This document shows, piece by piece, positions 7,304 through 62,214 of a stretch of DNA of 64,000 nt. The DNA is taken from IMG/VR virus record IMGVR_UViG_3300044974_001280, positions 1-64,000 of that record; one strand, given 5' to 3'. Below the pieces are notes generated by a model, which ran no database searches, was not told where the DNA came from, and saw only the letters and a program-made list of their open reading frames with translations. The first letter of the stretch is position 1. Each line of letters begins with the position of its first letter. Made by a program: the position numbers and the translations under genes.

Positions 7304-7311
7304 GATATATA
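7304..7311 (+). promoter_or_regulatory. Putative late promoter GATATATA
   Basis: Recurrent motif, 16 nt upstream of the ATG. Confidence 0.7.
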
Positions 7312-7327
7312 GTAACAAAATAATCTT

Positions 7328-7684
7328 ATGGCAAATACACTTTTGTTTGGAAAAATAAGTCCTGTTTTGAGTGTACCACAACAAGCAAATCAATTCAGTC
7401 AAAATATCACTTTTTTAACGGCCGATTATATGGCCGCTATCGCTGATCCATATCCTCTCGGAGCGACACAAGTCAACTTTTCTGTCCTATACGGTAACTG
7501 TCAGTTCAATGAATCTAACGAAATTATAGGATTTACGACCCTCTCTAGATCTGGGATCAATCTATCAGGTTCAGTGATCCAAAGCTGGGGTGTTGATGAC
7601 AAGGTTGTTCTAAATGCTATTGCATCTGCTCAAGGAACATCTATAGTTTCGACCCAAATTGGAACAGTGGATTCTTTTTTCTAG
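7328..7684 (+). CDS. Hypothetical protein, possibly fibre-associated or virion
   Basis: Clean ORF behind a late motif; no family recognised. Confidence 0.6.
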   Translation: MANTLLFGKISPVLSVPQQANQFSQNITFLTADYMAAIADPYPLGATQVNFSVLYGNCQFNESNEIIGFTTLSRSGINLSGSVIQSWGVDDKVVLNAIASAQGTSIVSTQIGTVDSFF

Positions 7685-7704
7685 TTTTTTTAAATTTCTG
7701 ACCT

Positions 7705-8526
7705 TTGGTTCAAAAAATCTTTTACAACAGTTCAATGCCCAGAGCAGGGTCTACTCTGATCCAAAATATACTGGGTCAGAATCCTCTTATTTACCCAACT
7801 CCAACCTCTGGTGTTTTCGAGATGCTCGCCGGGGCTAGAACAATTTTCACAGATGGTATAGAATTTAAAGCTCAATCGGAACAGGAAATGCTGGAGGGGT
7901 TTAAAGGATTCTTGAAAGGGGGACTTTATGGATTCTATAACAATATTACAGATAAACCTTACGTGATGGAAAAGTGTCGGGGCTGGAATTCGGAATGGGA
8001 GTTTGTGAATGCCTTCGATCCCAATCCAAAGATGATCTGTATGATTAGGGATATTAGGGCGGTCTATGCTTCTTTAGAAAAGAAATTCAGACAACATCCC
8101 CTTTTGGATCATCATCTAGCCAACTGGGGTAATTTGTCTGGAACTACCACCGATAAAAGGATCCAGGTTTGGTCGACTTCTCCGCCTATTGGTCCTTCCA
8201 TGGATAGAATCTACCAAGTTTTGGTCCAAGGGTTGCACGAAAAAATTCTGTTTGTTAAATTTGAAGATCTCTGTCGGGATCCAGAGTTTCAGATGAAAAG
8301 AATTTATGAATATCTCGATCTTGAATTTTTTCATCATGATTTTTACAACATTCCACAAATAACCAAAGAAGACGACCGGTGGTACGGTATTTTTGGAGAT
8401 CACGTCATTAGAAAGGAATTAAAGCCAGTGAGGGATGATTTCAGAGAAGTTTTAGGAACTAATGCCTGTAAATTAATTGAGGACAGCTATGCCTGGTTTT
8501 TTAACGATTTCGAATATCAAAGATGA
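7705..8526 (+). CDS. PAPS-dependent sulfotransferase
   Basis: 5'-PSB loop SMPRAGSTL, 3'-PB motif IRDIRAVYAS, and KFEDLCRDP. Confidence 0.9.
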   Translation: MVQKIFYNSSMPRAGSTLIQNILGQNPLIYPTPTSGVFEMLAGARTIFTDGIEFKAQSEQEMLEGFKGFLKGGLYGFYNNITDKPYVMEKCRGWNSEWEFVNAFDPNPKMICMIRDIRAVYASLEKKFRQHPLLDHHLANWGNLSGTTTDKRIQVWSTSPPIGPSMDRIYQVLVQGLHEKILFVKFEDLCRDPEFQMKRIYEYLDLEFFHHDFYNIPQITKEDDRWYGIFGDHVIRKELKPVRDDFREVLGTNACKLIEDSYAWFFNDFEYQR

Positions 8527-9542
8527 AGGTAGGATATAAAACTTCTTCTGAAATCCAGATCTCTCCCGAGCAAAAAGGAGAGATGAATTTACCCAAAGCG
8601 ACTGCCCGTAATTCAGACACAATAGTATCAATAATCACACAACAACAACAGTCCATGGAACATAAATATTTAGTTTGGCACATCGAAGGAGGTTTGGGTA
8701 AAAATGTTGCGGCTACTTCTCTTCTTTTACCCCTGGTAGAGAGATATCCCGAGAGAAAAATAATTGTGGTGGCTTCTTACCCTGAGGTTTTTTTAAACAA
8801 TCCGAACATCTATCGAGTTTATCGAGTTGGTATGACACCGTATTTTTATGACGATTACATTTTGGGTAAGGACACTTTAGTTTTTCGGCAAGAGCCTTAT
8901 TTTCAAAGCGGGCATATTCTGAAACAGAAACATCTGATTCAAAATTGGGCGGATCTTCTAGGATTAGATCTGGTTCAAAATCCTCTGCCTGATTTGAGAT
9001 TTAATATGGTTCAAAGCCAATTAACGAGCAATTGGAAAAGGGAAAGACCCATCTGTCTTATTCAAACAAACGGAGGACCCTTAGAAAATCAAGCCTACAC
9101 CTATGCCTGGACCCGAGATATTCCTATCGATTGGGCAATCTATCTGGCCAACAAGCTTTCCGACGTGTACCACATCATACAGGTCACTAGACCAGGTTCT
9201 CCTCAAATTCCCGGAGCTGAAGTGATTACTTCTCACTTGACCTCCTCTGATCTTTTTTCGCTCCTCAAAATGTCGGAAAAAAGAATTCTGATCGATTCTT
9301 GTCTCCAGCACGCCGCGGCAGCCTTCGGACTTCATGCTTTTGTTTTTTGGATAGGAACATCACCTGAGAACTTTGGTTACGGCTTGCATACTAACATCAA
9401 AGCCCTCCCACCTACAGGACAAACAAAGATGGTGGACTCTTATCTCTTCGATTATTCTTTTGACGGCGTTCTACACGAATGCCCCTATCAAAACGTGAAT
9501 GATATGTTTGATCCCACCCACTTAGAACAGATCTTTGTATGA
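8523..9542 (+). CDS. GT9-like (heptosyltransferase-fold) glycosyltransferase
   Basis: GGLGK N-terminal loop, EVFLNNP and IDSCLQHAAAA motifs. Confidence 0.7.
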   Translation: MKVGYKTSSEIQISPEQKGEMNLPKATARNSDTIVSIITQQQQSMEHKYLVWHIEGGLGKNVAATSLLLPLVERYPERKIIVVASYPEVFLNNPNIYRVYRVGMTPYFYDDYILGKDTLVFRQEPYFQSGHILKQKHLIQNWADLLGLDLVQNPLPDLRFNMVQSQLTSNWKRERPICLIQTNGGPLENQAYTYAWTRDIPIDWAIYLANKLSDVYHIIQVTRPGSPQIPGAEVITSHLTSSDLFSLLKMSEKRILIDSCLQHAAAAFGLHAFVFWIGTSPENFGYGLHTNIKALPPTGQTKMVDSYLFDYSFDGVLHECPYQNVNDMFDPTHLEQIFV

Positions 9543-10000: not shown

Positions 10001-10325
10001 GTGGCAGCCTTTACACGAGGGACATAAACATATTTTTAATGAGAGATTAAAATTAGGTAAGAATGTCTGGATAGCTATTCGAGATGTTACGCCCGATGAA
10101 AACCAACCCTGGACTGCTTCAGAAATCAAAGACAATATAGAAAAAATTTACTCTCGGGAAATCTCGGAGGGAAGGATTATTGTTACCATAGTTCCTGATA
10201 TTGAATCTATTAACTATGGTAGAGGAGTAGGCTATGAGATTATAGAACACGTGGTCCCAGCTGAAATTGCTTCTATTTCTGCTACCAGCATCAGAGAACA
10301 GATGAGAAAAGAAGGAACTTTATAG
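9969..10325 (+). CDS. HxGH-family nucleotidyltransferase (cytidylyltransferase-like)
   Basis: FIGRWQPLHEGH and ISATSIR motifs. Confidence 0.8.
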   Translation: MTKKFSLFIGRWQPLHEGHKHIFNERLKLGKNVWIAIRDVTPDENQPWTASEIKDNIEKIYSREISEGRIIVTIVPDIESINYGRGVGYEIIEHVVPAEIASISATSIREQMRKEGTL

Positions 10326-12866: not shown

Positions 12867-12874
12867 GATATATA
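12867..12874 (+). promoter_or_regulatory. Putative late promoter GATATATA
   Basis: Recurrent motif upstream of a structural gene. Confidence 0.7.
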
Positions 12875-15459: not shown

Positions 15460-15467
15460 GATATATA
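15460..15467 (+). promoter_or_regulatory. Putative late promoter GATATATA
   Basis: Recurrent motif. Confidence 0.7.
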
Positions 15468-18235: not shown

Positions 18236-18243
18236 GATATATA
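18236..18243 (+). promoter_or_regulatory. Putative late promoter GATATATA
   Basis: Recurrent motif. Confidence 0.7.
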
Positions 18244-21819: not shown

Positions 21820-21827
21820 GATATATA
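21820..21827 (+). promoter_or_regulatory. Putative late promoter GATATATA
   Basis: Recurrent motif. Confidence 0.7.
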
Positions 21828-24328: not shown

Positions 24329-24376
24329 TTCCTATCCTTTTCTTTTAGAATATATAGTCTAAAAGAGACCTAAATT

Positions 24377-26053: not shown

Positions 26054-26092
26054 TTTTTTTTTTTTGAGAGGTTACATACACATCTTGTGATG

Positions 26093-26100
26093 TATATTTG
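26093..26100 (+). promoter_or_regulatory. Bacteroidota-type -7 element TAnnTTTG (putative early promoter)
   Basis: TATATTTG upstream of the dCMP deaminase-ECF sigma operon. Confidence 0.6.
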
Positions 26101-26123: not shown

Positions 26124-26732
26124 ATGTCAAAATTTCTCAAAATCGTCGGATTCGATGAAGTCTTTTCCGTCCTCCAAAGTCTACCCACTCAGGTTCCCGA
26201 GCACCCCCTGTTTTCTCATTCCTGGGTAGCTAAATTTAATCCTTTTGAATTGATTTTCTTCAATGATATTAACAGCGAAATCGACGAAACTTTTTATCAC
26301 CCTAAAAATATTAAGAACGATCGGGTATATTTAACTATGGCGGAAGTGTGGTCTAAAAATTCTCATTGTCAAAGAATGAAAGTCGGAGCACTTATAGTTA
26401 AAAATAGATCTATTATCTCAGATGGTTATAATGGATCCCCCTCAGGATTTCCCAATCCCTGTGAAGGCCCAGATAATGTCACTTTGCCATACGTTTTACA
26501 TGCCGAAGCAAACGCCATTACTAAACTAGCAAAAAGCACCCAAAGCTGTGAAGACTCAACTCTTTTTGTAACAGTTTCCCCCTGTTACGATTGCTCCAAA
26601 TTGATAATTCAATCCGGAGTAAAAAGATTGGTTTTTAGAGAACTATATCGCAAAACAGAATCCTTGAGTTTTCTCTATCAAGGAGGACTAGAAATTATTC
26701 GTCTTAAAAATCCAACTCTCCCCAATGATTAA
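26124..26732 (+). CDS. cd: dCMP deaminase
   Basis: VGALIV, GYNG, HAEANAI and SPCYDC motifs. Confidence 0.92.
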   Translation: MSKFLKIVGFDEVFSVLQSLPTQVPEHPLFSHSWVAKFNPFELIFFNDINSEIDETFYHPKNIKNDRVYLTMAEVWSKNSHCQRMKVGALIVKNRSIISDGYNGSPSGFPNPCEGPDNVTLPYVLHAEANAITKLAKSTQSCEDSTLFVTVSPCYDCSKLIIQSGVKRLVFRELYRKTESLSFLYQGGLEIIRLKNPTLPND

Positions 26733-27336
26733 AGAAAAAAACATTCAGGTTCTGGCCGAAAATTTTATCTCTCAACGCGACAACAAGACCTTTAAAATTC
26801 TCTACGACAGGATCAGACCTGGTGTTTTGAACCACTGTTACACTATTCTAAAAGACCTCGAGCTGGCAGAGGATGCATTTATGAATTCCATGGCCAAAGT
26901 CTGGGAAAAAATTGAACAGTATGATTTATCAAGAGGTAACTTTTCTACCTGGTGCTACAATATAGCTAGAAACGAATCTCTACTTCTACTTAAAAGCAGA
27001 AAAAAATACATTTCCAAATCTTCGGAAGATTTAGAAATAGATTCCACCCAAAACGAGGAGTCAGGGGGTTTTCATGATGTAGAAACAGATCCTTTATGGC
27101 ATTTCTTCTTCCAAAGTCCAAATATTGATGAACTTTATGATCAGATTGTTGATGAAATTAGAGAGCTCCCAATTCTTTACAAGGACATCATGATAGATAG
27201 AGAGATCAATGGCATGAAATACAAAGATATAGCAGACAAATACGACATTAAAAAAAGATCTATTGCCACAAGAATAAGAAGGGCTCGAACCAAAATCAAG
27301 AACAAGATCGAAAAGTTCAACAAAATGAAGAAATAG
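26725..27336 (+). CDS. ECF-type sigma-70 family RNA polymerase sigma factor
   Basis: Region 2 AEDAF...FSTWCYNIARN; region 4 YKDIA...IATRIRRARTKI. Confidence 0.9.
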   Translation: MIKEKNIQVLAENFISQRDNKTFKILYDRIRPGVLNHCYTILKDLELAEDAFMNSMAKVWEKIEQYDLSRGNFSTWCYNIARNESLLLLKSRKKYISKSSEDLEIDSTQNEESGGFHDVETDPLWHFFFQSPNIDELYDQIVDEIRELPILYKDIMIDREINGMKYKDIADKYDIKKRSIATRIRRARTKIKNKIEKFNKMKK

Positions 27337-29226: not shown

Positions 29227-29234
29227 GATATATA
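29227..29234 (+). promoter_or_regulatory. Putative late promoter GATATATA
   Basis: Recurrent motif. Confidence 0.7.
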
Positions 29235-31015: not shown

Positions 31016-31557
31016 TGGCAACTAGACCTATCCCTTGTCCTCCTGCAGTTCCTAATGGCTGGGTTTTTTTTAAGGACCAATTTGTGTTAGAACAAGACTA
31101 CCAATACACCACTTTTTTTAATTTCAAAGATTTGGCTTTTGGAGTTGTAGCATATTCCAGGCTTAGAATTAGTTTAAAAAGAGGCAGATCTGTTAAATTA
31201 AGTCAATCCAATATTGGAACTGAAGGTTTTGTTCGATGGATAGCAGTAAAAGTGCAGTATCCAGCTCCTAAGAATCCTATCCTTTATGCATCTCAAACCC
31301 CAATTATTCCAGGTGTTCCAACTCCTACCAATGGCACACCCCAAATTCAGAAATATATCACCTGGACCTATCAGGGTAGAACTTTAAATCTGGGAGATAT
31401 GATGGTGCTTACAGGTAATCCTTTAGGGTCGACTGATTCTGAAGTTACTGGTTGGAACCTGAGTGAGGATGATTTCCTATTTGCTGGAGGCGGAATTACT
31501 TTCACGAATCCTCATTCAGATTTTGATGTCAAACTAGAAATTTTAGTTGCAAAATGA
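31015..31557 (+). CDS. Hypothetical structural protein, paralog of previous gene
   Basis: As above; coupled by a TAATG overlap. Confidence 0.65.
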   Translation: MATRPIPCPPAVPNGWVFFKDQFVLEQDYQYTTFFNFKDLAFGVVAYSRLRISLKRGRSVKLSQSNIGTEGFVRWIAVKVQYPAPKNPILYASQTPIIPGVPTPTNGTPQIQKYITWTYQGRTLNLGDMMVLTGNPLGSTDSEVTGWNLSEDDFLFAGGGITFTNPHSDFDVKLEILVAK

Positions 31558-31591
31558 ATATATACTAAACAAATTTTCAAGTTTGTCTTTA

Positions 31592-31599
31592 GATATATA
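31592..31599 (+). promoter_or_regulatory. Putative late promoter GATATATA
   Basis: Recurrent motif. Confidence 0.7.
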
Positions 31600-34511: not shown

Positions 34512-34539
34512 GGAACTTTTCTAATTTTAGTTGATATAA
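34512..34539 (+). promoter_or_regulatory. Putative ECF-type promoter for the late sigma gene
   Basis: GGAAC-N17-ATATAA, overlapping a GATATAAA late-like site. Confidence 0.5.
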
Positions 34540-34563
34540 AAAAAACAAGATATGTTTTTTTAA

Positions 34564-34923
34564 ATGTCGAAGATCTATGTAACTAATCAAAATCTGATGG
34601 AGGCAATTCTTGAATCTAAAGAGAAGGGAGAATTAACACCAGCAGCCATAGAAATGTTCACTCTGATGATCTCGGGCATTTCTAAAAAAATGTCTTATAA
34701 GGATCCTGATGATAAAGATGATTGTATGGCTTTTGCCATGGAGGATCTTTGCAAATATTGGAATAGATTCGACCCAGAAAAATCCAACAATCCTTTTTCC
34801 TATTACACCCAAATAGCCAAAAATGGGTTTGCAAAAGGCTGGAAAAAAATACATCCCCCCAAATCACCTAAGACTATTCCTTTTTCTCACATCACGGGAG
34901 AAGATAATTCTTATAATGTGTAA
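34564..34923 (+). CDS. gp55: Late-transcription sigma factor (T4 gp55-like), minimal
   Basis: YVTN...FDPEKSNNPFSYYTQIA motif. Confidence 0.85.
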   Translation: MSKIYVTNQNLMEAILESKEKGELTPAAIEMFTLMISGISKKMSYKDPDDKDDCMAFAMEDLCKYWNRFDPEKSNNPFSYYTQIAKNGFAKGWKKIHPPKSPKTIPFSHITGEDNSYNV

Positions 34924-35440: not shown

Positions 35441-35448
35441 GATATATA
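35441..35448 (+). promoter_or_regulatory. Putative late promoter GATATATA
   Basis: Recurrent motif. Confidence 0.7.
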
Positions 35449-43024: not shown

Positions 43025-44176
43025 ATGTTAAACGTTCTTATTGATGGACACTATTTGTTCCATAAAACTTTTGGTATTTTCAGTGGTTACGGCACGAAAG
43101 AACCCAATGAAATTCTAGGCCACAAAAACGACAGGGCTATGTTCATCAGAAAGCTGGCAACCGACCTGTGTTCATCTCTGAAACAAATCCCTATTACCGG
43201 GAGAGTGGTGTTTGTTTCTGATTCAAGAAGTTGGAGAAAAGATATTCCAATCGAAGGTGGGGGATACAAATCCAATCGGGTTAAGAGTCCCCAGGTCGAT
43301 TGGAGCATTTTCTTTAATTTAATTAATGAATTTGGTCAACATCTAGAGCAGAAAGGTTTTATTTTTTCAAAAGTGGAGGGAGCAGAGGGAGATGATCTTC
43401 TCTATTTCTGGTCCAAATATTTCAATGAAAAAGGAGAAAATTGTCTCATTGTTTCGGGTGATAAGGACATGGATCAACTTGCACGTTGGACAGAAGATAG
43501 CTGGACAGTCGTTTGGAGTTCTAACTCTAAAAATAACACCTTTAGAGTTCCTCTGGGTTGGGGCTCAGAGTATTTGAACAAAAAGACCGAAATTACGGTT
43601 TTTGATCTAGGTGAATCTATTTCACCAGAAAAGAAAAAAATTCAAGAACTAGTTGGCAAGTGTAACATTGAGGAAATAGATGCCCAGACTTTTGTTTTTT
43701 TAAAAATGATGGAAGGTGATAAGGGTGATGCCGTTCCCAGCGTTTGGGAAGTTAAAAGCCCGGACGGGAAAACCTTCAGAATCACTCCTAAAAAAGCCCA
43801 ACAAATTTTAGACTCAGTCAGAGAATCGGGATGGAGCATTTCAGATTTTCAATTGTTGTTGATGGATGAAGCTTTTCTGGAATGGATTAGCGGGTTTGTT
43901 CTAAGATTCATGAAAGATTTAGATAACGAAACCAACAGACAGAAAGTTGTCGATAATTTTCAAAGAAATTTCTCTTTAATGTGGTTGGATACCTCAGTTA
44001 TTCCAGAGGCTGTTGCAGATAGAGTCACTTCCCAAATTAAAGGGTATTCTATCCTACCCAACTCAAGTGTTCCTTCAGATTGGAAAATTTTGTTGGAAGG
44101 TACAGAGTGGTTGGAAAGTAAAGCTCCTTCTTATTTAGACCCTTTTTCAAATTATCAGTCCAATGGATTTATTTGA
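43025..44176 (+). CDS. rnh: 5'-3' exonuclease / T4 RNase H-like (FEN family)
   Basis: IDG, SWRK, YKSNR, EGDD, SGDKDMDQL and GDKGDAVP motifs. Confidence 0.88.
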   Translation: MLNVLIDGHYLFHKTFGIFSGYGTKEPNEILGHKNDRAMFIRKLATDLCSSLKQIPITGRVVFVSDSRSWRKDIPIEGGGYKSNRVKSPQVDWSIFFNLINEFGQHLEQKGFIFSKVEGAEGDDLLYFWSKYFNEKGENCLIVSGDKDMDQLARWTEDSWTVVWSSNSKNNTFRVPLGWGSEYLNKKTEITVFDLGESISPEKKKIQELVGKCNIEEIDAQTFVFLKMMEGDKGDAVPSVWEVKSPDGKTFRITPKKAQQILDSVRESGWSISDFQLLLMDEAFLEWISGFVLRFMKDLDNETNRQKVVDNFQRNFSLMWLDTSVIPEAVADRVTSQIKGYSILPNSSVPSDWKILLEGTEWLESKAPSYLDPFSNYQSNGFI

Positions 44177-44588
44177 GCTAGTTAAATCGGTTTTTAAATC
44201 CGACGAAGAGTGGAAAAAGGTGCCAAGAAGTGTGAAGACAAAACATTTTTTCATGGTTAATAGAATTATGTCCATCCAGTTTCCGATTCATGCCCATCTA
44301 TTTAACCACTCCAAGATCGAAATGGTGCCAGTAGTGGATTGGTGGCACGGATTTTTATGCAATGCTTTTAAAAAACCACCCACCTGGATCTATACAACTG
44401 GACCTAAAAAAAATGCGGTTCAGGCAGTAGAGAAAAATCATGACACAGAAGAATTCATTAGAACCAAATACGAATTAAGCTCCAGGGATCTGAAACAGCT
44501 CCAGACCTTTTACCCTGAATCTTACTCCCAGTGGATGGACTCAATCTCTGACCAATTGGGAAGAAATAAAAAACAATCGGATATATAA
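44163..44588 (+). CDS. Possible clamp loader small subunit (gp62-like)
   Basis: FMVNRIMS resembles the gp62 core; near gp44. Confidence 0.4.
   Translation: MDLFELVKSVFKSDEEWKKVPRSVKTKHFFMVNRIMSIQFPIHAHLFNHSKIEMVPVVDWWHGFLCNAFKKPPTWIYTTGPKKNAVQAVEKNHDTEEFIRTKYELSSRDLKQLQTFYPESYSQWMDSISDQLGRNKKQSDI
44580..44587 (+). promoter_or_regulatory. Putative late promoter GATATATA
   Basis: Recurrent motif. Confidence 0.65.
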
Positions 44589-47417: not shown

Positions 47418-48122
47418 ATGATCCCTTCCTACACTCTTGAAAAGCACCTTTACTTCGACGTCGAAACTGCGGGAATTACCCCAGATTTGCAAACTCTTCA
47501 GCAAACAAACCCCAGATTGGCAAAACTCTGGGAAAGAAGGGTCAAATACTACAGATCCTACCCCGAATACGCCCAAGCCACTTCGGATGCTATTTTCTTG
47601 GATAAAGCTGGGCTAGAACCAGAATTTGCCCGGGTTGTCTGTGTTTCTTTTGGTCAGATAGATTCAGATGGAAAAAGTAGATTCGTTTCTTTCTCAGGGG
47701 AAGAAGAGGCAGAAATCCTCGCCAAATCCAAAAAAGTTATTATCAACGCCCAGGGCAAAAACATGAAGCTGGCAGGCCATAATATCAAAGGCTTCGATGT
47801 GCCCTGTCTGTGCAAAAGGATGCTTTTCAACGGAATCAAACCCCCAGCCTTACTTCAGGTTTGGGATAAAAAACCCTGGGACATTCCCTTTTTGGACACC
47901 TCTGAAGTGTTTGCCTTTGGGAGCTGGTCCCAACAGAAATACTTGAGCCTAGATCTATTGGCCTGCTCTTTGGATGTTGTTTCCCCGAAAGAGGATATCG
48001 ATGGCTCACAGGTTCATCGGGTTTTCTGGGAAGAAAAAGATCACGCCAAAATCTCTCAATATTGCGAAAAGGATGTTGAAACTGTCATCAACGTGCTTCA
48101 AAAGGTTGCCCGGTTGGAATAA
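47418..48122 (+). CDS. Stand-alone DEDD 3'-5' exonuclease (PolB-exo-like)
   Basis: FDVET, GHNIKGFDVP, LDT and YCEKDV motifs. Confidence 0.88.
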   Translation: MIPSYTLEKHLYFDVETAGITPDLQTLQQTNPRLAKLWERRVKYYRSYPEYAQATSDAIFLDKAGLEPEFARVVCVSFGQIDSDGKSRFVSFSGEEEAEILAKSKKVIINAQGKNMKLAGHNIKGFDVPCLCKRMLFNGIKPPALLQVWDKKPWDIPFLDTSEVFAFGSWSQQKYLSLDLLACSLDVVSPKEDIDGSQVHRVFWEEKDHAKISQYCEKDVETVINVLQKVARLE

Positions 48123-48148
48123 AAAATTTTAATTTAACAGACACTGAG

Positions 48149-48183
48149 ACTGGTTTAGATATATACTCTAAACCAGTTTTTTT
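48149..48183 (+). terminator. Intrinsic terminator whose stem/loop contains a GATATATA late motif
   Basis: ACTGGTTTAGA-TATATAC-TCTAAACCAGT plus T run; GATATATA at 48158-48165. Confidence 0.8.
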
Positions 48184-48888
48184 GTGGCCTACATTTCAGA
48201 TTTTGAAAATTTTCTTCTAGTTGAATCCGATTCAACTTCCCAGCCTGTTTTTAACGGGATCTGGGATCCTATGGTAGACGGAAAGGGAAAAAGACACTGG
48301 AGGTTGAATGTGTTAGTCTTATCCAAACTCAAAAAGATAGCAGAGGAGGCTCACGATCACTGCCGGGGGAATTTCCAAACTGAATTAAAGGATGTGGTTC
48401 TACTGTGTCCTGCTAATTTTACGAATTCCGAGGACGATCTGGATCTGGTTCTGCTCGTGGAAAAAAGAGGGAATTTAAAAAAAGGATCCAGATCAGAAAT
48501 GGAAGACCAAATGAACGAACATCTCTCTGACTACGTGGCTGAAAAAAACCCCCGTCTTAGAGGCAAAGAGGTGGAGATAGAAGCTTCTACATCCGATTAC
48601 TTTCCTAAAAGGCTAGGAGTTTATTCACTTTTTGACAACAAGTGGCTCCAATCACCTCCCTCTGATCAGGATTTAGATTTTGTGGGGGTATCAGTCAAAA
48701 AAATTATCGGAGCAATCAAAAAACTAGATTCTTCTTCTTTATCAGAGACCCCCCGAAAAAAAATTCAGAAAATATCCAGACAGATCCAGAGACTCAAAAG
48801 ATCCGGTCCAACTGGCATAGGGTCCTACAATCATCTGTTGTCGGGTGGATATATACACAAAATAATGGATCTCCTTTCCAAAAAATAA
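48184..48888 (+). CDS. Degenerate nucleotidyltransferase-like protein with CTS-like N-terminus
   Basis: MAYISDFENF; DVVLL...AN...DDLDL...GVYSL..NKW pattern but lacking the GS motif. Confidence 0.5.
   Translation: MAYISDFENFLLVESDSTSQPVFNGIWDPMVDGKGKRHWRLNVLVLSKLKKIAEEAHDHCRGNFQTELKDVVLLCPANFTNSEDDLDLVLLVEKRGNLKKGSRSEMEDQMNEHLSDYVAEKNPRLRGKEVEIEASTSDYFPKRLGVYSLFDNKWLQSPPSDQDLDFVGVSVKKIIGAIKKLDSSSLSETPRKKIQKISRQIQRLKRSGPTGIGSYNHLLSGGYIHKIMDLLSKK
48848..48855 (+). promoter_or_regulatory. Putative late promoter GATATATA (inside upstream CDS)
   Basis: Recurrent motif, about 40 nt before ATG 48896. Confidence 0.55.
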
Positions 48889-51430: not shown

Positions 51431-51438
51431 GATATATA
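51431..51438 (+). promoter_or_regulatory. Putative late promoter GATATATA
   Basis: Recurrent motif. Confidence 0.7.
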
Positions 51439-51462: not shown

Positions 51463-53493
51463 ATGAGTCTAGGTCCTTTTGGAGAAGATATGGTTTTCAT
51501 TCTGGAAAAACAGAATCACCATGTTAATGTTTCGAAACAGAAAGTAGATGGGGACAATGTTTACACATTGAAAGGAATTGCTGCTCAATTTGGTAAAGAA
51601 AACAACAACAATAGAATCTACGAAGAAGCAGAATATCTACCCCATCTTGACTACTTGAACGAGAAAATCAAACAAAAAAGATTGGTTGGTGAACTAGATC
51701 ACCCCGAGAAATTTGATGTCTCTCTCAGAAACATTTCACACATCATCGAAAATCTCGAGTATGATAAAAACGGTCGGGTACTGAACATTAAAGTCAAGTT
51801 GCTTGATACTCCCGCAGGTCAGATTGCCAAGAAGCTGGTTGATGCCGGTGTTCCTCTTTCTATTTCTTCAAGAGCTGCTGGTAATGTGGGTCCGGATAAA
51901 AAGGTTCAGATCAAAAAGATCTTCACTTACGACCTAGTCGCAGATCCTGGTTTTCAAGACGCCCAATTAGAAAGAGTCTATGAAAGCGCGGGCTTTTCTT
52001 TTTCGGAATTCGCCGACAAGACTAAAAATTCCATTGTGAGCCATTTAGAGTGTATCAATGAATCTTTGGGTCTAAAAAATAACGATTCAGTAAAGATATA
52101 TAGAGTCGAAAATAACGAAGAATTCGAAAAAATATTCACAACAGAAAAAAATAACATCGATATTATGGAGTCACAAAAAAGAGAATTCGTTACGGCCGAA
52201 GAGCTCAACAAATATTCTATTTTTCTGAAAAAGAAAATGGAGGAAATGGAAATGCAAATTCAGGAGATGAAGAGCAGTTCACCACAGTCAAGCAATGCAT
52301 CTGAAAATGCTCAGCTGTTGGAGAGAATTGACCGTCTAGAAGAATATTCCGAATATCTAGCCGAAAATTTAGAGGATGCTATCAAATACGGCGAATATTT
52401 GGCTGAAAATTTGGACGACTCCATCAATTACAGCAAGTATCTGGCCGAGAGCCTGGATAAATCGATCTCTTACTCGAAGTATTTGGCCGAGAATGTAGAC
52501 AACTCTATTTCTTATTCAGAATACGTAGCAGAGAATGTGGATAGAACCATCAACTACTCGAAATATTTGGCAGAAAAGATCGACGATGGTATTCAGTACA
52601 GCGAGTATGTGGCTGAAAACCTAGGTAACAGTATTGCCTACTCTGAATATCTGGCCGAAAACGTCGACAGAGGAATTGCCTACTCTGAATATCTGGCCGA
52701 GAAGGTTGATAGGAACATTTCGTACTCTGAATATCTGGCCGAGTATATCGATAAAGACATCGCCTACTCTGAATATCTAGGAGAAAAAATAGATCAAGGT
52801 ATTTCTTACTCTGAATATCTGGCTGAAAAACTAGATCAGGGTATCTCTTATTCGGAATATCTGGCTGAAAATGTGAACAGGACTATCTCTTACTCTGAAT
52901 ACATTGCAGAAAAATTAAACGGCACAATTGAATTTGGTGAGGCACTATCAGAAAAAGTTGGTTATCCAACCCATCTGAATTCCAGAGCCAGATCAGAAGC
53001 AAATCTTGCCGCTAAAACTGAATTATTTGAATCAGGATTTGCCGGGGATTATAATAACCTCGGAAGTCAAATCGATTCATTAATCGAATCGGTCCAAACC
53101 CAAAAGACCGAATTAACCCGGGCCCAACTGGTTGGAAGGCCCTCTGCCCACACTCCAAAGGCAGAAGAGATGCTCAACGAGAATCAATCAGCCACCATTT
53201 CCTCCTCAGGTCATAAATTTATCGACGAAATGCCGGAAAATTATGCTCCAATTTGGGAATCTCTCAACGAAGGACAGAAGCAATCTATTATTGCTCAGTC
53301 CGCTTTCTATCGATTGGAGACACCTTATCAGATCAACAATTTCTGGTCTACTCGTAACTTGAGGAAAGAAACGGTGACTATGCAGAGACTCGATGAGAAT
53401 CAACAAACCCATGCTCTTCCCCAGTCGACGACTCGTGCTTATGGAAGTGATTACCTAAACTGGGTAGCTCAATCACTGGAGAAAAGATTCTAA
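51463..53493 (+). CDS. gp21: Prohead protease (gp21-like) fused to a scaffold-like region
   Basis: N.N.RIY, GELDHP, LLDTPAG, ISSR and TYDLVADPGF, followed by coiled-coil repeats; upstream of the capsid gene. Confidence 0.9.
   Translation: MSLGPFGEDMVFILEKQNHHVNVSKQKVDGDNVYTLKGIAAQFGKENNNNRIYEEAEYLPHLDYLNEKIKQKRLVGELDHPEKFDVSLRNISHIIENLEYDKNGRVLNIKVKLLDTPAGQIAKKLVDAGVPLSISSRAAGNVGPDKKVQIKKIFTYDLVADPGFQDAQLERVYESAGFSFSEFADKTKNSIVSHLECINESLGLKNNDSVKIYRVENNEEFEKIFTTEKNNIDIMESQKREFVTAEELNKYSIFLKKKMEEMEMQIQEMKSSSPQSSNASENAQLLERIDRLEEYSEYLAENLEDAIKYGEYLAENLDDSINYSKYLAESLDKSISYSKYLAENVDNSISYSEYVAENVDRTINYSKYLAEKIDDGIQYSEYVAENLGNSIAYSEYLAENVDRGIAYSEYLAEKVDRNISYSEYLAEYIDKDIAYSEYLGEKIDQGISYSEYLAEKLDQGISYSEYLAENVNRTISYSEYIAEKLNGTIEFGEALSEKVGYPTHLNSRARSEANLAAKTELFESGFAGDYNNLGSQIDSLIESVQTQKTELTRAQLVGRPSAHTPKAEEMLNENQSATISSSGHKFIDEMPENYAPIWESLNEGQKQSIIAQSAFYRLETPYQINNFWSTRNLRKETVTMQRLDENQQTHALPQSTTRAYGSDYLNWVAQSLEKRF
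52345..52932 (+). repeat. 14 tandem 42-bp (14 aa) repeats YSEYLAE(N/K)xDxxIx
   Basis: Direct translation; tactctgaatatctggccga recurs. Confidence 0.92.
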
Positions 53494-53519
53494 AAAAAAA
53501 CAAAAAAAACAATAAAAAA

Positions 53520-55241
53520 ATGAAACTAATTAACGAAGCCGAGATTTTTGATACCTGGGCACCTATTATTGAACAAAAAGCTGGTATCACTGATCCCTCA
53601 AAACAAACTTGGTTGGCAAAATATTGCCACTACCACTCCCTCAACGAGTCTGCCGGTGCATATCAGTCGTTGAATGTCGTCAACGGTATGGGTGCCGTTA
53701 CACCTCCTACCTTCCCAGCAGCAACAGCAGCCGGTTCTCTTGGCGGTCTAACTCCTAACCAAGGATTCTACAGCCAGTCTTGGCAAGGATCTGGCGATAA
53801 GTTCCCTTCACTTCTTCCTTTGGCTATTCAGGTAGCTGCGAAGACTGTAGGTTTCGACATCGTTCCAGTTATTCCAATGTCCGGTCCTTCTGGCGTTTTG
53901 TCCTACCTTGACTATGTGTATGCCGGTGGTAAGATCAGCCCGCAAAACGCCGGAACTACAGCTGCCGAGGCTTTGGCAAATGCTCCTACAATGATCAAAT
54001 TGCAAATCACTACCCAGACGAACATGTCTTTACTAGAGGTAGGACCAAATACACCAGGTACAGATTATTACATCTCCAACGCCAGTGCTTCAGCTACTGA
54101 ATACATCACTGCTAGGTTTGTAGGCTACTCTAGAATTGATGGATTTCCAATTTTTGAAATCACAGCAATGACCGCAGGTGAAACTGTTGCCTCCGTTCTT
54201 AGCGGAGGTGCTTTCATTGGTACTACAATTGCCGGAGATGAAGTTGGTAGTACCACAGCTACTGCTTCTCTGGTTAAGGCTCTAGAGGATCACATTCAGG
54301 GTTTCTCTGGTGCAGGTTTTTATGACGATCAGAATTGGCAAGGTCCCTTCACCGATGGCACACAGACTTACAATCCGATGCTAAGAAGTGTAGGTGAAGA
54401 AAACTACTACAATTTGATGGGTCTAACGACTTTCACTAAGTTCGTAGAAGCCGACACCTTCCAGGTAGCCGCTTCCGTTACCACGGAGCAAATCCAGGAT
54501 CTCAACAAGCAATTCGGAATCGATGTTATCTCAATGATCGAAAACGCATTGGTGAATGAGGTTTCTCAGGCTATCAACAAGCACATCTTGTCAAGGGCAT
54601 TTGCTTTAGGATGGTCTAACACCTATGCTTTCTTCCAAACAGAAGCACAGAATTTGAACTTGAGCCTAGTATTGGGTGGTGCAACAGGAACTACCCTTGC
54701 CTATGTTACTAAAACTGACGGAACCCAATCAATGTCTATCCCAGCCGGGCCTGCTAATGGAGGTTACGAGAATTTGTCAACTCTACAGAGAAGGCTTTTC
54801 TCCCGGATCTTGGCAGCTGCCAACATGGTAGCTAACAGAGGTAGAAGAGGTCCTGCTAACTTCATTGTTACCAACGCTAATTTGGCTTCGGCAATGCAGG
54901 ACATCAGCCAATTCACTTTCGCTCCTTTCACTAACACCTTGACTCAGAACAATGGTACTCTGTATCCAGTAGGTTCTTTGGCAGGTATGACTGTCTACGT
55001 CGATCAAAACATGAGATTCTCCGATAACCGTATCCTAGTCGGTAGAAAAGGTGGAGACGACGAGCCAGGTCTAAAATTCATGCCTTACATGATGGCTGAA
55101 TCTATCCAGACTATCTCCGAGGGAACTATGTCTCCTAAAATCGCGGTCAAGTCTCGTTACGCTCTAGTAGAAGCTGGTTTCCACCCAGAAACCATGTATG
55201 CTACTTTCTTCGTACAAGTTCCGGTTGGAGGTATCAACTAA
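53520..55241 (+). CDS. gp23: Major capsid protein (gp23-like)
   Basis: PMSGPSG, EQIQDL, EV...INK, ANRGRRGPANF, PY and KSRY motifs. Confidence 0.92.
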   Translation: MKLINEAEIFDTWAPIIEQKAGITDPSKQTWLAKYCHYHSLNESAGAYQSLNVVNGMGAVTPPTFPAATAAGSLGGLTPNQGFYSQSWQGSGDKFPSLLPLAIQVAAKTVGFDIVPVIPMSGPSGVLSYLDYVYAGGKISPQNAGTTAAEALANAPTMIKLQITTQTNMSLLEVGPNTPGTDYYISNASASATEYITARFVGYSRIDGFPIFEITAMTAGETVASVLSGGAFIGTTIAGDEVGSTTATASLVKALEDHIQGFSGAGFYDDQNWQGPFTDGTQTYNPMLRSVGEENYYNLMGLTTFTKFVEADTFQVAASVTTEQIQDLNKQFGIDVISMIENALVNEVSQAINKHILSRAFALGWSNTYAFFQTEAQNLNLSLVLGGATGTTLAYVTKTDGTQSMSIPAGPANGGYENLSTLQRRLFSRILAAANMVANRGRRGPANFIVTNANLASAMQDISQFTFAPFTNTLTQNNGTLYPVGSLAGMTVYVDQNMRFSDNRILVGRKGGDDEPGLKFMPYMMAESIQTISEGTMSPKIAVKSRYALVEAGFHPETMYATFFVQVPVGGIN

Positions 55242-55331: not shown

Positions 55332-55339
55332 GATATATA
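55332..55339 (+). promoter_or_regulatory. Putative late promoter GATATATA
   Basis: Recurrent motif. Confidence 0.7.
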
Positions 55340-59811: not shown

Positions 59812-59833
59812 GGTTCTTTATAAACCCATAATT

Positions 59834-60199: not shown

Positions 60200-60203
60200 A
60201 GGG

Positions 60204-60231: not shown

Positions 60232-60247
60232 AACAGAAACATCCGCG

Positions 60248-60790
60248 GTGATTAAAATTTTCGAAGGAGCTAGAAATTCAGGGAAAACATATCTGTCCTC
60301 TGAATTTTCTAAAATGTCCAACCTCCCCCTCTTTAAATTCCAATTCTCAGATTGGTTTGGCCTGCTGAATCTGACCGATCAAGATCCCAAGACCCACTAT
60401 TTTGCCCTGGGCAAAGAGCTCATGCTGCTCCAGACCAACAAAGAAGGTCTTTTAGCTGATTTAATCCTAGATAGAGGATTTTTAACTGTTTTTACCTGGG
60501 CTATTCTCAGTAGCAGAACCACTGAAGAAAATGCCATGACCCAATTTGATCTGCTTCAAACCATGGGTCTTCTAACCAATCTGCAGATCTTCCTGGTTGT
60601 TGGTAAAAATCCTAGTCAAGACCCCAGGAATAAGGACCACTGGGATTTCAGAGACGGCCAAGACGACGAGGCCAGAATCCTACTGAAGCTCTTGTCTCAC
60701 CTGAAAAAAATTGCTCCTCAGGTTCCCGTAATTGAGATCCAGAATGATTTTAGCCCTCGTACTCTTGCCCAATTAAGACAAAATTTTTAA
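60248..60790 (+). CDS. P-loop nucleotide kinase (dTMP-kinase-like)
   Basis: IFEGARNSGKT and LDRGFLT motifs. Confidence 0.75.
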   Translation: MIKIFEGARNSGKTYLSSEFSKMSNLPLFKFQFSDWFGLLNLTDQDPKTHYFALGKELMLLQTNKEGLLADLILDRGFLTVFTWAILSSRTTEENAMTQFDLLQTMGLLTNLQIFLVVGKNPSQDPRNKDHWDFRDGQDDEARILLKLLSHLKKIAPQVPVIEIQNDFSPRTLAQLRQNF

Positions 60791-60791
60791 T

Positions 60792-62195
60792 ATGTGTGGA
60801 ATTTTACTTTCCTTATCCGGGACCGACTCTGTTTTGAATAGCATCTCCCATCGGGGAATAGAAAGGAACACCCTAGAAAGAGATGGTGTTTTTTTAACCC
60901 ACCATCGTCTGCCCATTCAGACAGAGGCAGGAGACGGCTGGAAGCAACCTCTAGAAATTTCTCCTGGCATTTTCTTGATGTACAACGGAGAGATCTTTAA
61001 CTATGATAAATCTCTTTACACCTCTGATATTGATTATCTGTCCCGCCTTTTTGGGACTTGGACGGGAGGGGATTTTCAGATGTTCTGTGCAATTTTTCTA
61101 GCCCGTATTCAGAACTGGGATGGTTTTTGGTCCGTAGTCATCTACGATTCAAAGCAGAAGAATGTTATTTGCTTTACTGACCCTTTGGGTAAAAAATGTT
61201 TGTATAAGAACGAGGACGGGGAATTGTCTTCTGAAATTAAGTCCCTGGTGACCGAGTTTTCTCCACTTGATGTTTCCTATTTAAGTTCGGTAAAGAAATT
61301 TGGTTACGTGCCAAACGGTGACACTCCTTACCGAAATGTGAAGAGGCTGCTTCCCAACACAATCTATTCTTATTCTCTTCAGAGTCCTGATTTTGTCACA
61401 GTCTTTCCTCACTATTACAGATTTTTGAATTTTCCTCTTGCTGAATTATCTAATGCCTCCTACGATGAGCACATGGAGTGGTTATGGAACAAACTTTTCG
61501 AATCCGTTCAGAACAGACTTCTGTCTAAAAATTATCCTATTTCTCTCCTGGTGTCAGGGGGTTTAGATTCTTCTATCATAGCTGGTATTTTATCCGAATT
61601 AAAAGCTAGTACTACCTGGTTTAGTATCGAAAACGGAGAAAGAGAATACGTGGATCTTCTCTCCAAACATCTGGGACAAGAGGTTGTGTTTTTGGACTAC
61701 GAGGTTCAAAACGAAAAAAACGCCGAAATTTACGCCAGATGGAACGAGGGCCCGGTCGATCTAGGCTCGGTTATTCCCCAATATTATTTGTTCGAGTCCA
61801 TTAAGAAATTTGGTCAGCATCGGATAGTTCTGAGCGGGGATGGAGCAGATGAACTGTTTGGAGGTTATTCTCGCATTTTGGATTACGATTCCCAACAATC
61901 AGATGTCTTTCAAGAACTGTCTTTTTATCATTTACCCAGATTGGATAAACTCTCTATGGCTCACACTCTAGAACTGAGAAACCCTTTTTTGCACCTCGAT
62001 CTAGTCAGATTTGCCTTGTATCTGCCTTTGGAATGGAGAACAGGCAAAAAAATTCTTAAAGACACTTTTGGTCCTTTGCTCCCTTCTGCAATAATCGATA
62101 GACCCAAGGAGGCCCTTAAAAATCCTTTAATCAAACAGGATAAAATCAAATACAGACTCTGGGTAGCGGATCTCTTTGAAAACAATCATATTTAA
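60792..62195 (+). CDS. asnB: Asparagine synthetase B-like glutamine amidotransferase
   Basis: MCGI, HRG, NGEIFN, SGGLDSS, SGDGADELFGGY and E.R.PFL motifs. Confidence 0.9.
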   Translation: MCGILLSLSGTDSVLNSISHRGIERNTLERDGVFLTHHRLPIQTEAGDGWKQPLEISPGIFLMYNGEIFNYDKSLYTSDIDYLSRLFGTWTGGDFQMFCAIFLARIQNWDGFWSVVIYDSKQKNVICFTDPLGKKCLYKNEDGELSSEIKSLVTEFSPLDVSYLSSVKKFGYVPNGDTPYRNVKRLLPNTIYSYSLQSPDFVTVFPHYYRFLNFPLAELSNASYDEHMEWLWNKLFESVQNRLLSKNYPISLLVSGGLDSSIIAGILSELKASTTWFSIENGEREYVDLLSKHLGQEVVFLDYEVQNEKNAEIYARWNEGPVDLGSVIPQYYLFESIKKFGQHRIVLSGDGADELFGGYSRILDYDSQQSDVFQELSFYHLPRLDKLSMAHTLELRNPFLHLDLVRFALYLPLEWRTGKKILKDTFGPLLPSAIIDRPKEALKNPLIKQDKIKYRLWVADLFENNHI

Positions 62196-62206
62196 AATCT
62201 TTTGGA

Positions 62207-62214
62207 GATATATA
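62207..62214 (+). promoter_or_regulatory. Putative late promoter GATATATA
   Basis: Recurrent motif. Confidence 0.7.

What the first reader, a model, noticed from the sequence alone, without database searches (positions are those of the whole stretch)
7304..62214. GATATATA: a variant late promoter before structural genes
Seen: 14 perfect copies shortly upstream of starts, at 7304, 12867, 15460, 18236, 21820, 29227, 31592, 35441, 44580, 48158, 48848, 51431, 55332 and 62207. Variants occur at 10325, 24349, 31557 and 34533. Known: T4 gp55 reads a -10-only TATAAATA. Inference: the 119 aa gp55 homologue here has shifted specificity, and the motif flags unknown ORFs (7328, 29255, 44599, 48184, 48896, 55360, 62258) as late genes.
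Basis: partly seen in the sequence, partly recalled or inferred. Interest (0 to 1): 0.6.

Follow-up and report, generated by a model that had tools for sequence, protein, structure and literature searches.

The report
Variant T4-type late promoter motif
An eight-base signal, GATATATA, sits just upstream of about 40 genes of an uncultured 230-kb freshwater phage and its many relatives; it is most likely their late-gene start signal, a shifted version of phage T4's TATAAATA, and it helps to annotate giant-phage genomes whose genes are mostly unknown.

Summary
The window is the first 64 kb of a 230,445-bp IMG/VR phage contig. In the whole contig, 40 of 47 copies lie within 80 nt upstream of a gene in the gene's orientation (p = 1e-47). 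It is the top-ranked 8-mer there, whereas T4's TATAAATA scores 1 of 8. A 99%-complete relative gives the same result (41 of 48). In 80 related contigs the strand count is 217 to 1, and the copies sit at orthologous intergenic positions. There is no -35 element. Natural variants at orthologous sites are AATATATA and GATAAATA, so the consensus is R-[G/A]ATA[T/A]ATA, with the same ATAxATA core as T4-type late promoters. The downstream genes encode sheath, tube, portal, protease/scaffold and capsid, baseplate, fibres and three endolysins. They also encode SSB, PhoH and nucleotide enzymes, so the class is "late-type", not "structural only". The 119-aa gp55 homologue has a sigma-region-2 fold (best PDB match T4 gp55) and is the likeliest reader, but this is inferred. 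A second, ECF-type sigma is also encoded, no gp33 or gp45 was found, and no start sites are mapped. This is a new variant of a known kind, of moderate interest.

The parts
7304..7311 (+). GATATATA, 16 nt before ATG 7328 (unknown 118-aa ORF)
12867..12874 (+). GATATATA, 29 nt before ATG 12904 (849 aa, weak neck/head-closure match)
15460..15467 (+). GATATATA, 31 nt before ATG 15499 (300-aa unknown; large terminase 16409 follows)
18236..18243 (+). GATATATA, 26 nt before ATG 18270 (tail sheath), just after a T-run
21820..21827 (+). GATATATA, 8 nt before ATG 21836 (tail tube; a second tube paralogue at 22406)
24349..24356 (+). Variant AATATATA, 20 nt before ATG 24377 (558 aa, weak tape-measure match). 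Relatives have an exact GATATATA here.
29227..29234 (+). GATATATA, 20 nt before ATG 29255, after a hairpin plus T-run. Some relatives carry GATAAATA at the orthologous site.
31557..31564 (+). Variant AATATATA, 35 nt upstream of the 31592 copy. Relatives have two exact copies about 30 nt apart here, i.e. a tandem promoter.
31592..31599 (+). GATATATA, 27 nt before ATG 31627 (902-aa unknown). Exact in 45 of 45 relatives.
35441..35448 (+). GATATATA, 58 nt before ATG 35507 (portal paralogue 1). Exact in 75 of 77 relatives; the other 2 have AATATATA.
44580..44587 (+). GATATATA in the last codons of ORF 44163-44588, 11 nt before ATG 44599 (unknown)
48158..48165 (+). GATATATA embedded in the 5' arm and loop of a terminator-like hairpin (-19.9 kcal/mol, then U7) that follows gene 47418-48122. 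It lies 18 nt before GTG 48184 and 105 nt before ATG 48271.
48848..48855 (+). GATATATA in the 3' end of ORF 48271-48888, 40 nt before ATG 48896 (833-aa unknown)
51431..51438 (+). GATATATA, 24 nt before ATG 51463 (prohead protease-scaffold ORF, followed by major capsid gene 53520-55241, which has no promoter of its own). Conserved in 6 of 6 relatives.
52095..52102 (+). It is a candidate internal promoter for a nested scaffold gene plus the capsid gene.
   Evidence: present in 6 of 6 relatives (63-75% aa identity) with invariant codons AAG ATA TAT (codon usage 26%, 17% and 56%) and a conserved ATG; metatranscriptome contigs in three of four runs begin only downstream of it.
55332..55339 (+). GATATATA, 20 nt before ATG 55360 (unknown 230 aa, right after the capsid gene). 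Conserved in relatives.
62207..62214 (+). GATATATA, 43 nt before ATG 62258 (unknown 247 aa)
34564..34923 (+). gp55-like late sigma, 119 aa, sigma-region-2 domain only. It is the presumed reader of the motif.
   Evidence: phrog_234 E 1.4e-14, covering profile positions 7-111 of 181. PDB 7D7C_F E 7.5e-4. AF2 model pLDDT 82.5, best fold match T4 gp55 with TM 0.74.
26725..27336 (+). Second phage sigma, ECF-type (Sigma70_r2 + r4_2), 203 aa. It is the rival reader, and more likely serves a separate class with a -35 element.
34512..34540 (+). GGAAC-N16-GATATAAA before the gp55-like gene.
26093..26100 (+). TATATTTG box, 23 nt before the operon of dCMP deaminase and the ECF sigma. It belongs to a second promoter-like class that is concentrated in the small-gene region at 189-228 kb.

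Best explanation
GATATATA (fuller consensus R-[G/A]ATA[T/A]ATA) is the -10-only late-type promoter of this phage clade. It is functionally homologous to T4's TATAAATA at -13 to -6.

Proposed mechanism: host RNA polymerase core carrying the phage's 119-aa gp55-like sigma-region-2 protein melts the element and starts transcription about 6 nt downstream, giving short A-rich leaders. Some 45-60 such promoters head the transcription units for virion, lysis and some nucleotide and DNA-metabolism genes over 0-173 kb. One is an internal promoter inside the protease-scaffold gene.

Shown: the enrichment, orientation, absence of a -35 element, conservation and natural variants of the motif; the identity of the downstream genes; and the gp55 homology and fold.

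Inferred: Also inferred: a cascade of host-type TATATTTG promoters (early region and ECF sigma operon), then ECF-type GRAAC-N16 promoters (including the gp55 gene), then GATATATA.
For: 1. Statistics. There are 15 copies against 1.03 expected, all on +. In the whole genome 40 of 47 copies lie within 80 nt upstream in sense, p = 1.4e-47, the top-ranked of all 8-mers; TATAAATA is 1 of 8. Minus-strand copies precede minus-strand genes, and two divergent gene pairs share a palindromic GATATATATC.
2. Replication. The 99%-complete relative G002 gives 41 of 48, p = 1.4e-47. Across 80 IMG/VR loci the count is 217 forward to 1 reverse.
3. Footprinting. The exact motif lies before the portal in 75 of 77 relatives, before ORF 31627 in 45 of 45, and before ORF 29255 in 31 of 41. 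The exceptions carry AATATATA or GATAAATA at the same place, and the flanks diverge. Clades whose gp55 is only 52-57% identical still have AGATATATA or GATAAATA in intergenic spots, including before the portal.
4. Architecture. There is no information upstream of position -1, only 2 of 47 sites have an ECF-like -35 pentamer, and purines are enriched where +1 is expected. Sigma-70-type sites are not enriched: 29 against 36 expected.
5. Fit to the T4 gp55 structure. T4 reads A-12 and A-8 in deep pockets (Y97, T99) and A-9 in a shallow one (PMC7892883). Here positions -12 and -8 tolerate almost no change and -9 is the variable one. Y97, T99 and N13 equivalents are kept.
6. Downstream genes. These are sheath, tube, portal, protease and capsid, baseplate-like, fibre-like, and 3 endolysins. 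Only 2 exact copies fall in the roughly 100-gene small-ORF region at 173-225 kb, where the TATATTT[GA] class sits instead.
7. Expression. RNA-library contigs from 4 freshwater metatranscriptomes (3 studies) cover the scaffold part and capsid gene but not the flanking genes.
8. Conservation of the factors. gp55 is 80-90% identical in relatives with an invariant motif, whereas the ECF sigma is only 54-68% identical.
Against: - No transcription start site or time course exists. The RNA data are assembled contigs and cannot show 5' ends.
Distant relatives (Lak, LR756500) also carry extra sigmas, so presence or absence cannot discriminate.
- The T4 co-activator gp33 and clamp gp45 were not found here or in 92-99%-complete relatives. 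The gp55 homologue lacks T4's helix-loop-helix and C-terminal clamp-binding tail. The T4 mechanism therefore cannot simply be transferred.
- Several downstream genes are not classical late genes: SSB, PhoH, dTMP kinase.
- The H95->F change does not track the -9 base across clades.
- Four copies lie only 4-5 nt from the called start, which implies leaderless mRNAs or mis-called starts.
- The gene calls are my own simple ORF calls.
Confidence: 0.75

Rival explanations
1. The motif is a real phage promoter, but it is read by the ECF-type sigma (26725-27336) and not by the gp55 homologue.
For: The ECF-type sigma gene is present and conserved in all relatives whose loci reach that region. It sits behind a host-type box, so it could be made early and switch on the GATATATA class. 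No strong promoter class of its own was defined: the strict ECF pattern gives only 3 upstream of 8, and the looser pattern 16 of 65.
Against: ECF sigmas carry region 4.2 and need a -35 element, and GATATATA sites have none. The ATAxATA core is that of gp55 promoters in T4, cyanophages and Aeh1. A GRAAC-N15-17 class enriched upstream of genes, including the gp55 gene, fits the ECF sigma better. The ECF sigma diverges (54-68% identity) while the motif stays invariant.
Confidence: 0.12
2. The motif is read by the host's own primary sigma, as a general phage promoter active at all times.
For: It also precedes non-structural genes. The element is A/T-rich like a -10 box.
Against: There is no -35 or -33 element. 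The G (or A) at the first position is essentially invariant, which is unlike TATAAT or the Bacteroidota TAnnTTTG. Sigma-70-like sites are not enriched. A separate TATATTT[GA] class with a complementary genomic distribution looks like the host-type promoter.
Confidence: 0.05
3. The motif acts at the RNA level in 5' leaders, as a processing site or a translation or stability signal, and not as a promoter.
For: It is sense-oriented and upstream of starts, which an RNA signal would also be. Some copies are only 4-11 nt from the start codon.
Against: The spacing to the start codon varies from 4 to 67 nt. Two palindromic GATATATATC copies serve divergent genes. 17 of 47 copies follow a T5+ run within 45 nt, and one lies inside a terminator hairpin, that is, at unit boundaries. 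The sequence is homologous to known late promoters.
Confidence: 0.05
4. The pattern is a chance or compositional artefact, or the footprint of a repeated mobile sequence.
For: The word is a simple A/T-rich alternating sequence.
Against: None of 100 shuffles reaches 15 copies. The strand ratio in relatives is 217 to 1. The flanks are unrelated to each other. Orthologous positions are conserved while the flanks diverge.
Confidence: 0.01

Closest known systems
Phage T4 late promoter TATAAATA (-13 to -6), read by gp55 with gp33 and the sliding clamp gp45
   Same: Both are 8-bp, -10-only elements with no -35, lying short distances upstream of virion and lysis genes. They are identical at 6 of 8 positions (7 of 8 for the natural variant GATAAATA). 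A gp55 homologue with a sigma-region-2 fold is encoded. The pocket residues for A-12 and A-8 (T4 Y97, T99) and N13 are conserved, and those two bases are invariant here.
   Different: Position -13 is G (sometimes A) instead of T. Position -9 is T in about 90% of sites instead of A. The sigma is 119 aa against 185 aa and lacks the helix-loop-helix motif and C-terminal clamp-binding tail. No gp33 or gp45 homologue is detectable. An extra ECF-type sigma is encoded.
Late promoters of other T4-like phages: cyanophage S-PM2/Syn9 NATAAATA, Aeromonas phage Aeh1 CTAAATA
   Same: They show that positions -13 and -12 drift between T4-like lineages while the ATAAATA core and gp55 stay (PMC2984593; PMC1524935). 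This clade is a further step of the same kind.
   Different: Those variants keep A at -9, and those phages keep gp33 and gp45. Here -9 is mostly T, -13 is a specified G or A rather than N, and gp33 and gp45 are not found.
Huge phages with short gp55: Lak megaphages of Prevotella and the uncultured phage LR756500
   Same: Their gp55 homologues are the nearest named relatives (47-50% identity). They are also about 115-125 aa beyond the start and also have F at the T4 H95 position. The portal and head genes are the nearest in the phage database.
   Different: In a 40-kb sample, Lak-A1's best upstream 8-mer is AATAAATA (11 of 16) and LR756500's is ATATATAA (8 of 14). Those genomes are 460-540 kb and about 25% GC. 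No promoter analysis of these phages was found in the searched literature.

Membership tests
T4-type late promoter / gp55 late transcription system | Short A/T-rich -10-like element with the core ATAxATA | tested here: met
   GATATATA and GATAAATA against TATAAATA; variant tolerance measured.
T4-type late promoter / gp55 late transcription system | No -35 element (a -10-only promoter) | tested here: met
   No information content upstream of -1 in 47 sites; only 2 of 47 have GRAAC at -35 distance.
T4-type late promoter / gp55 late transcription system | Located upstream of virion-structure and lysis genes, in their orientation | tested here: met
   It also lies before some metabolic genes.
T4-type late promoter / gp55 late transcription system | Phage encodes a gp55-family sigma (sigma-region-2 homology domain) | tested here: met
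   phrog_234 E 1.4e-14; 7D7C_F E 7.5e-4; fold match TM 0.74.
T4-type late promoter / gp55 late transcription system | gp55 carries the helix-loop-helix motif and a C-terminal sliding-clamp-binding tail | tested here: not met
   The match covers only profile positions 7-111 of 181. The protein ends about 20 residues after region 2, in a Pro-rich, low-confidence tail. A different conserved C-terminal [YH]N[VIF] exists, of unknown function.
T4-type late promoter / gp55 late transcription system | Co-activator gp33 encoded | tested here: not met
   phrog_254 gives no match in G000. In three relatives (79-99% complete) there is one noise-level hit (E 0.015), which turned out to be a head-protein-like ORF. 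Small and divergent homologues could escape HMMs.
T4-type late promoter / gp55 late transcription system | Sliding clamp gp45 encoded (the mobile enhancer) | tested here: not met
   phrog_223, PF02916, PF09116, PF00705 and PF02768 all give no match, although a gp44-like clamp loader is present. Clamps diverge fast, so absence is not proven.
T4-type late promoter / gp55 late transcription system | Transcripts start about 6 nt downstream of the element, appear late, and depend on gp55 | not testable with these tools
   Only assembled metatranscriptome contigs were available. They show that the capsid region is expressed but show no 5' ends.

The most novel reading that the evidence does not exclude
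This large clade of uncultured freshwater jumbo phages, and perhaps the wider short-gp55 group that includes Lak-like megaphages, may run late transcription with a minimal sigma. The sigma would be a 115-120-aa region-2-only protein that works without the T4 gp33/gp45 sliding-clamp activation. It would sit at the end of a three-tier cascade: host-type TATATTTG box, then phage ECF sigma with GRAAC-N16 promoters, then gp55 with RGATAWATA. Late transcription would then be uncoupled from replication, or coupled through an unrelated partner that binds the conserved C-terminal [YH]N[VIF] tail.
Probability: 0.25. Interest if true: 0.65.

Novelty: new variant of a known kind. Interest (0 to 1): 0.45.

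Why it matters
Most genes of jumbo and mega-phages from metagenomes have no recognisable function. A verified late-promoter word gives a sequence-only way to split such genomes into transcription units and temporal classes. It also nominates unknown ORFs as late (virion, assembly or lysis) genes, and it reveals nested genes such as the internal scaffold start at 52165.

The finding also extends the known drift of the gp55 promoter. Previously only -13 and -12 were known to vary; here -9 varies, in a lineage whose gp55 is stripped to the region-2 domain and in which gp33 and gp45 are not detectable. That makes it a natural test case for which parts of the T4 late machinery are dispensable. The motif and factor are abundant in freshwater metagenomes (hundreds of contigs), so the rule applies widely.

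Tried and rejected
1. Megablast of 20 kb against 50,697 phage records found no match. There is no close cultured relative, so no ready annotation.
2. Sigma-70 consensus scan: not enriched, 29 against 36 expected. Bipartite Bacteroidota TTTG-N17-21-TAnnTTTG and TTGACA-type patterns have almost no upstream sites.
3. Strict ECF pattern GGAAC-N15-18-CGT: only 3 upstream of 8.
4. Structural explanation of the -9 shift by T4 H95->F: rejected. F is invariant in the whole short-gp55 family and also present in Lak-A1, whose enriched motif has A at -9.
5. GATGTATA looked tolerated (3 of 4), but the copies are parts of other boxes (TGATGTATATTTG at 26089; TATAAT-like at 195273). It is not counted as a variant.
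6. TTTAACAC and TAAAACAA upstream enrichments are fixed-distance leader sequences of paralogous small genes, not promoters.
7. The marginal gp33 hit in a relative (E 0.015) is an orthologue of G000 133378-133791 and resembles a head protein. Rejected.
8. Metatranscriptome contigs cover about 52.25-55.22 kb but cannot give 5' ends. They break at the A-run before the capsid gene, which is an assembly effect.
9. Literature search for GATATATA together with phage promoters found nothing relevant.
10. Complex prediction, the search of protein representatives and the protein-atlas search were not used. No binding claim rests on them, and the family scans sufficed.

Full report
**What the window is.** The window is the first 64 kb of a single 230,445-bp IMG/VR viral contig. 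It is 39.8% GC, linear, and about 85% complete by CheckV. About 91% of my ORF-based gene calls are on the + strand. Megablast finds no phage record. By protein, the nearest records are uncultured huge phages (LR756500 and others), Prevotella Lak megaphages and Sphingomonas phage PAU, with portal identity of 31-44%. IMG/VR holds at least 266 contigs with a gp55 gene 80-100% identical. The sequence also occurs in freshwater metatranscriptomes. It is therefore an abundant, uncultured freshwater jumbo phage with a T4-like core.

**Window gene content.** The window encodes:
- a repeat-rich fibre or spike protein (724-4878), large terminase (16409), sheath (18270) and two tube paralogues (21836, 22406);
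- a gp4-like head-closure protein (34923) and two portal paralogues (35507, 37117);
- ligase, gp44-like clamp loader and exonucleases;
- a prohead protease-scaffold ORF (51463) and the major capsid protein (53520);
- many unknown ORFs.

**Check of the observation.** GATATATA occurs 15 times, always on the + strand, against 1.03 expected; none of 100 shuffles reaches 15. Twelve copies are in the 4.6% of the window that is non-coding. Two are in the last codons of the preceding ORF. The spacers to the next start are 8-58 nt.

**Whole-genome test.** There are 38 copies on + and 9 on -. The minus-strand copies sit just upstream of minus-strand genes, and two divergent gene pairs share a palindromic GATATATATC. 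In an unbiased test of all 8-mers, GATATATA ranks first for lying within 80 nt upstream of a gene in sense orientation: 40 of 47, p = 1.4e-47. T4's own TATAAATA scores 1 of 8. Sigma-70-type sites are not enriched.

**Anatomy of the element.**
- Aligning the 47 sites shows no conserved -35. The base before the motif is a purine in 42 of 47 sites. An A often follows the motif. Purines are enriched 5-6 nt downstream, where a T4-like register would place +1.
- One-mismatch analysis shows which positions tolerate change. G->A at the first position gives 7 of 10 upstream, and T->A at the fifth position (GATAAATA) gives 5 of 13 upstream. The two A's corresponding to T4 -12 and -8 tolerate almost nothing.
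- This mirrors the T4 gp55 open-complex structure, in which A-12 and A-8 enter deep pockets and A-9 a shallow one (PMC7892883).

**Conservation.**
- In 80 related loci (1.26 Mb) there are 217 forward copies and 1 reverse copy, at orthologous offsets.
- Anchoring on the downstream gene rather than on the motif gives the same picture. The exact word is present before the portal in 75 of 77 loci (the other 2 have AATATATA), before ORF 31627 in 45 of 45, and before ORF 29255 in 31 of 41. The remainder carry GATAAATA at the same spot. The motif is the only block at least 95% conserved in these leaders.
- Contigs whose gp55 is only 52-57% identical still show AGATATATA or GATAAATA in intergenic positions, including before the portal.
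- A 99%-complete relative (270,629 bp, 36% GC) reproduces the genome-wide result independently: 41 of 48, p = 1.4e-47, with AATATATA at 21 of 36.
- The consensus for the clade is R-[G/A]ATA[T/A]ATA.

**What lies downstream.** In the window the downstream genes are sheath, tube, portal, protease-scaffold (with the capsid gene behind it, which has only an A-run leader and no promoter of its own), a neck-like protein, and unknown ORFs. Elsewhere they are three endolysin-like genes, a baseplate-wedge-like and a fibre-like gene, three paralogous minus-strand genes, and many unknowns. They also include a gp32-like SSB, PhoH, dTMP kinase, an NTP pyrophosphatase and a nuclease. Variant copies precede the giant 3,778-aa ORF and other large fibre-like genes. 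The class is thus 'late-type' rather than strictly structural, as in T4 and cyanophages, where some replication genes also have late promoters.

Only 2 exact copies fall in the region of roughly 100 small ORFs at 173-225 kb. That region instead carries a second promoter-like word, TATATTT[G/A]. It has 13 upstream sites, 11 of them at 189-228 kb and one before the operon of dCMP deaminase and the ECF sigma. It resembles the Bacteroidota primary-sigma -7 box TAnnTTTG (from my own knowledge).

**The factor.** ORF 34564-34923 is a true gp55 homologue. It matches phrog_234 with E 1.4e-14, T4 gp55 chain 7D7C_F with E 7.5e-4, and annotated cyanophage gp55 at 30-35% identity. An AlphaFold model (pLDDT 82.5) has T4 gp55 as its best PDB match (TM 0.74), followed by sigma region-2 domains.

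It covers only the region-2 part of the profile (positions 7-111 of 181). T4's helix-loop-helix motif and C-terminal clamp-binding tail have no counterpart. The family (over 120 clusters, 114-120 aa) instead ends in a Pro-rich linker and a conserved [YH]N[VIF]. Equivalents of T4 N13, F86, Y97 and T99 are kept, and H95 is F. This F is invariant in the family and also present in Lak-A1, whose best upstream word is AATAAATA. It therefore does not explain the T at -9.

gp33 and gp45, and the beta-clamp and PCNA families, were not detected here or in 92-99%-complete relatives. A gp44-like clamp loader is present.

**The rival reader.** The genome has exactly two Sigma70_r2 genes. The other (26725-27336) is an ECF-type sigma with region 4.2. 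However, an ECF sigma needs a -35 element, and only 2 of 47 sites have one.

A separate pattern, GRAAC-N15-17-nnTAnnnA, is enriched upstream of genes: 16 of 65 here and 20 of 86 in the relative. It occurs before the gp55 gene itself (GGAAC-N16-GATATAAA at 34512), and GRAAC is present in 31 of 41 distinct gp55 leaders of relatives. This suggests a cascade from host sigma to ECF sigma to gp55, but it does not show one. The exact late word is absent from gp55 leaders in relatives.

**Expression data.** Contigs from four freshwater metatranscriptomes (three studies), nearly identical to the window, cover about 52.25-55.22 kb, which is the scaffold part and the capsid gene. They do not cover 50.0-51.2 kb and barely cover 55.4-56.0 kb. 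This uneven coverage argues for RNA rather than contaminating DNA and fits high late expression. Contigs cannot show 5' ends, however.

**The internal copy.** The copy at 52095 lies 62 nt before an in-frame ATG (52165, codon 235), just after the protease domain. In six relatives with 63-75% protein identity, the word, its three codons (AAG ATA TAT, of which AAG at 26% and ATA at 17% are minority codons) and the ATG are all invariant, while neighbouring codons vary. I read this as an internal promoter for a nested scaffold gene plus the capsid gene. This is inferred.

**Comparison with what is known.** T4 uses TATAAATA at -13 to -6. In other T4-likes, -13 is A or T. S-PM2 and Syn9 use NATAAATA, and Aeh1 uses CTAAATA. 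A specified G or A at -13 with T preferred at -9 was not found in the searched literature. The system meets the promoter-side and sigma-side features of the T4 late system but fails the clamp-side features (see the membership table). It works like a T4 late promoter. Whether it is activated like one is open.

**Verdict.**
- Observation: confirmed.
- Interpretation: partly supported.
- Novelty: a new variant of a known kind.
- Interest: moderate. The motif has practical value for annotating uncultured jumbo phages, and the minimal gp55 without detectable gp33 or gp45 is a more interesting open question.

Noticed in passing
window 35507-37111 and 37117-38742: Two adjacent portal (gp20-like) paralogues, 52% identical. 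The duplication is kept in 70 of 76 related loci and in the 99%-complete relative, whereas more distant clades (L111, L112) have one portal. Two portal genes in one phage are unusual.
   Followed up: partly
window 26725-27336: A phage-encoded ECF-type sigma factor (Sigma70_r2 + r4_2, 203 aa). It lies in an operon with dCMP deaminase and an exonuclease, behind a TATATTTG box at 26093.
   Followed up: partly
G000 189-228 kb (L102-L104), plus window 26093 and 59804: A second promoter-like word, TATATTT[G/A], often preceded by a T-rich stretch. It has 13 sense-upstream sites, concentrated in the small-ORF region. It resembles the Bacteroidota sigma-A -7 box and so hints at the host phylum and at the early promoter class.
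   Followed up: partly
window 34512-34540; G000 4910, 130996, 133035, 224884: A possible third, bipartite class, GRAAC-N15-17-(R)(A/C/T)TA(A/T)A(A/T)A, of which 5 of 6 occurrences are upstream of genes. One precedes the gp55-like gene, and GRAAC recurs in most relatives' gp55 leaders.
   Followed up: partly
window 52095-52167: An internal GATATATA plus a conserved in-frame ATG (codon 235) inside the protease-scaffold ORF. This suggests a nested scaffold gene, as in lambda C/Nu3-type arrangements.
   Followed up: yes
window 48142-48186: The GATATATA copy at 48158 lies in the 5' arm and loop of a strong hairpin (-19.9 kcal/mol, z -3.9) followed by U7. A terminator and a promoter are superimposed.
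   Followed up: partly
window 53494-53519: The capsid gene leader is an almost pure A-run (taaaaaaaaacaaaaaaaacaataaaaaa ATG) without a Shine-Dalgarno sequence. A-rich words are the next most enriched upstream 8-mers genome-wide. RNA assemblies break at this run.
   Followed up: no
G000 147039-149936, minus strand (L100): Three tandem paralogous genes (260-367 aa, of unknown PHROG families). Each has its own GATATATA and a nearly identical leader (gggattgtctagaGATATATAaggcgtgaaacacctcc).
   Followed up: no
G000 99591-110927 (L097/L098): A single ORF of 3,778 aa preceded by the variant GATAAATA. The neighbouring large ORFs give fibre-like hits.
   Followed up: no
G000 212.9-213.9 kb (L103): TTTAACACcaaataNaaATG is repeated at a fixed distance before four small tandem genes. 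It is a shared leader of a paralogous gene array.
   Followed up: no
gp55-like family (alignment A1): All of the 40-plus short gp55 homologues end in a Pro-rich linker and a conserved C-terminal [YH]N[VIF]. This may be a docking peptide that replaces T4's clamp-binding tail.
   Followed up: no
L085 (Lak-A1) and L084 (LR756500): In 40-kb samples around their gp55 genes, the best sense-upstream 8-mers are AATAAATA (11 of 16) in Lak-A1 and ATATATAA (8 of 14) in LR756500. These are candidate late promoters of those megaphages.
   Followed up: partly
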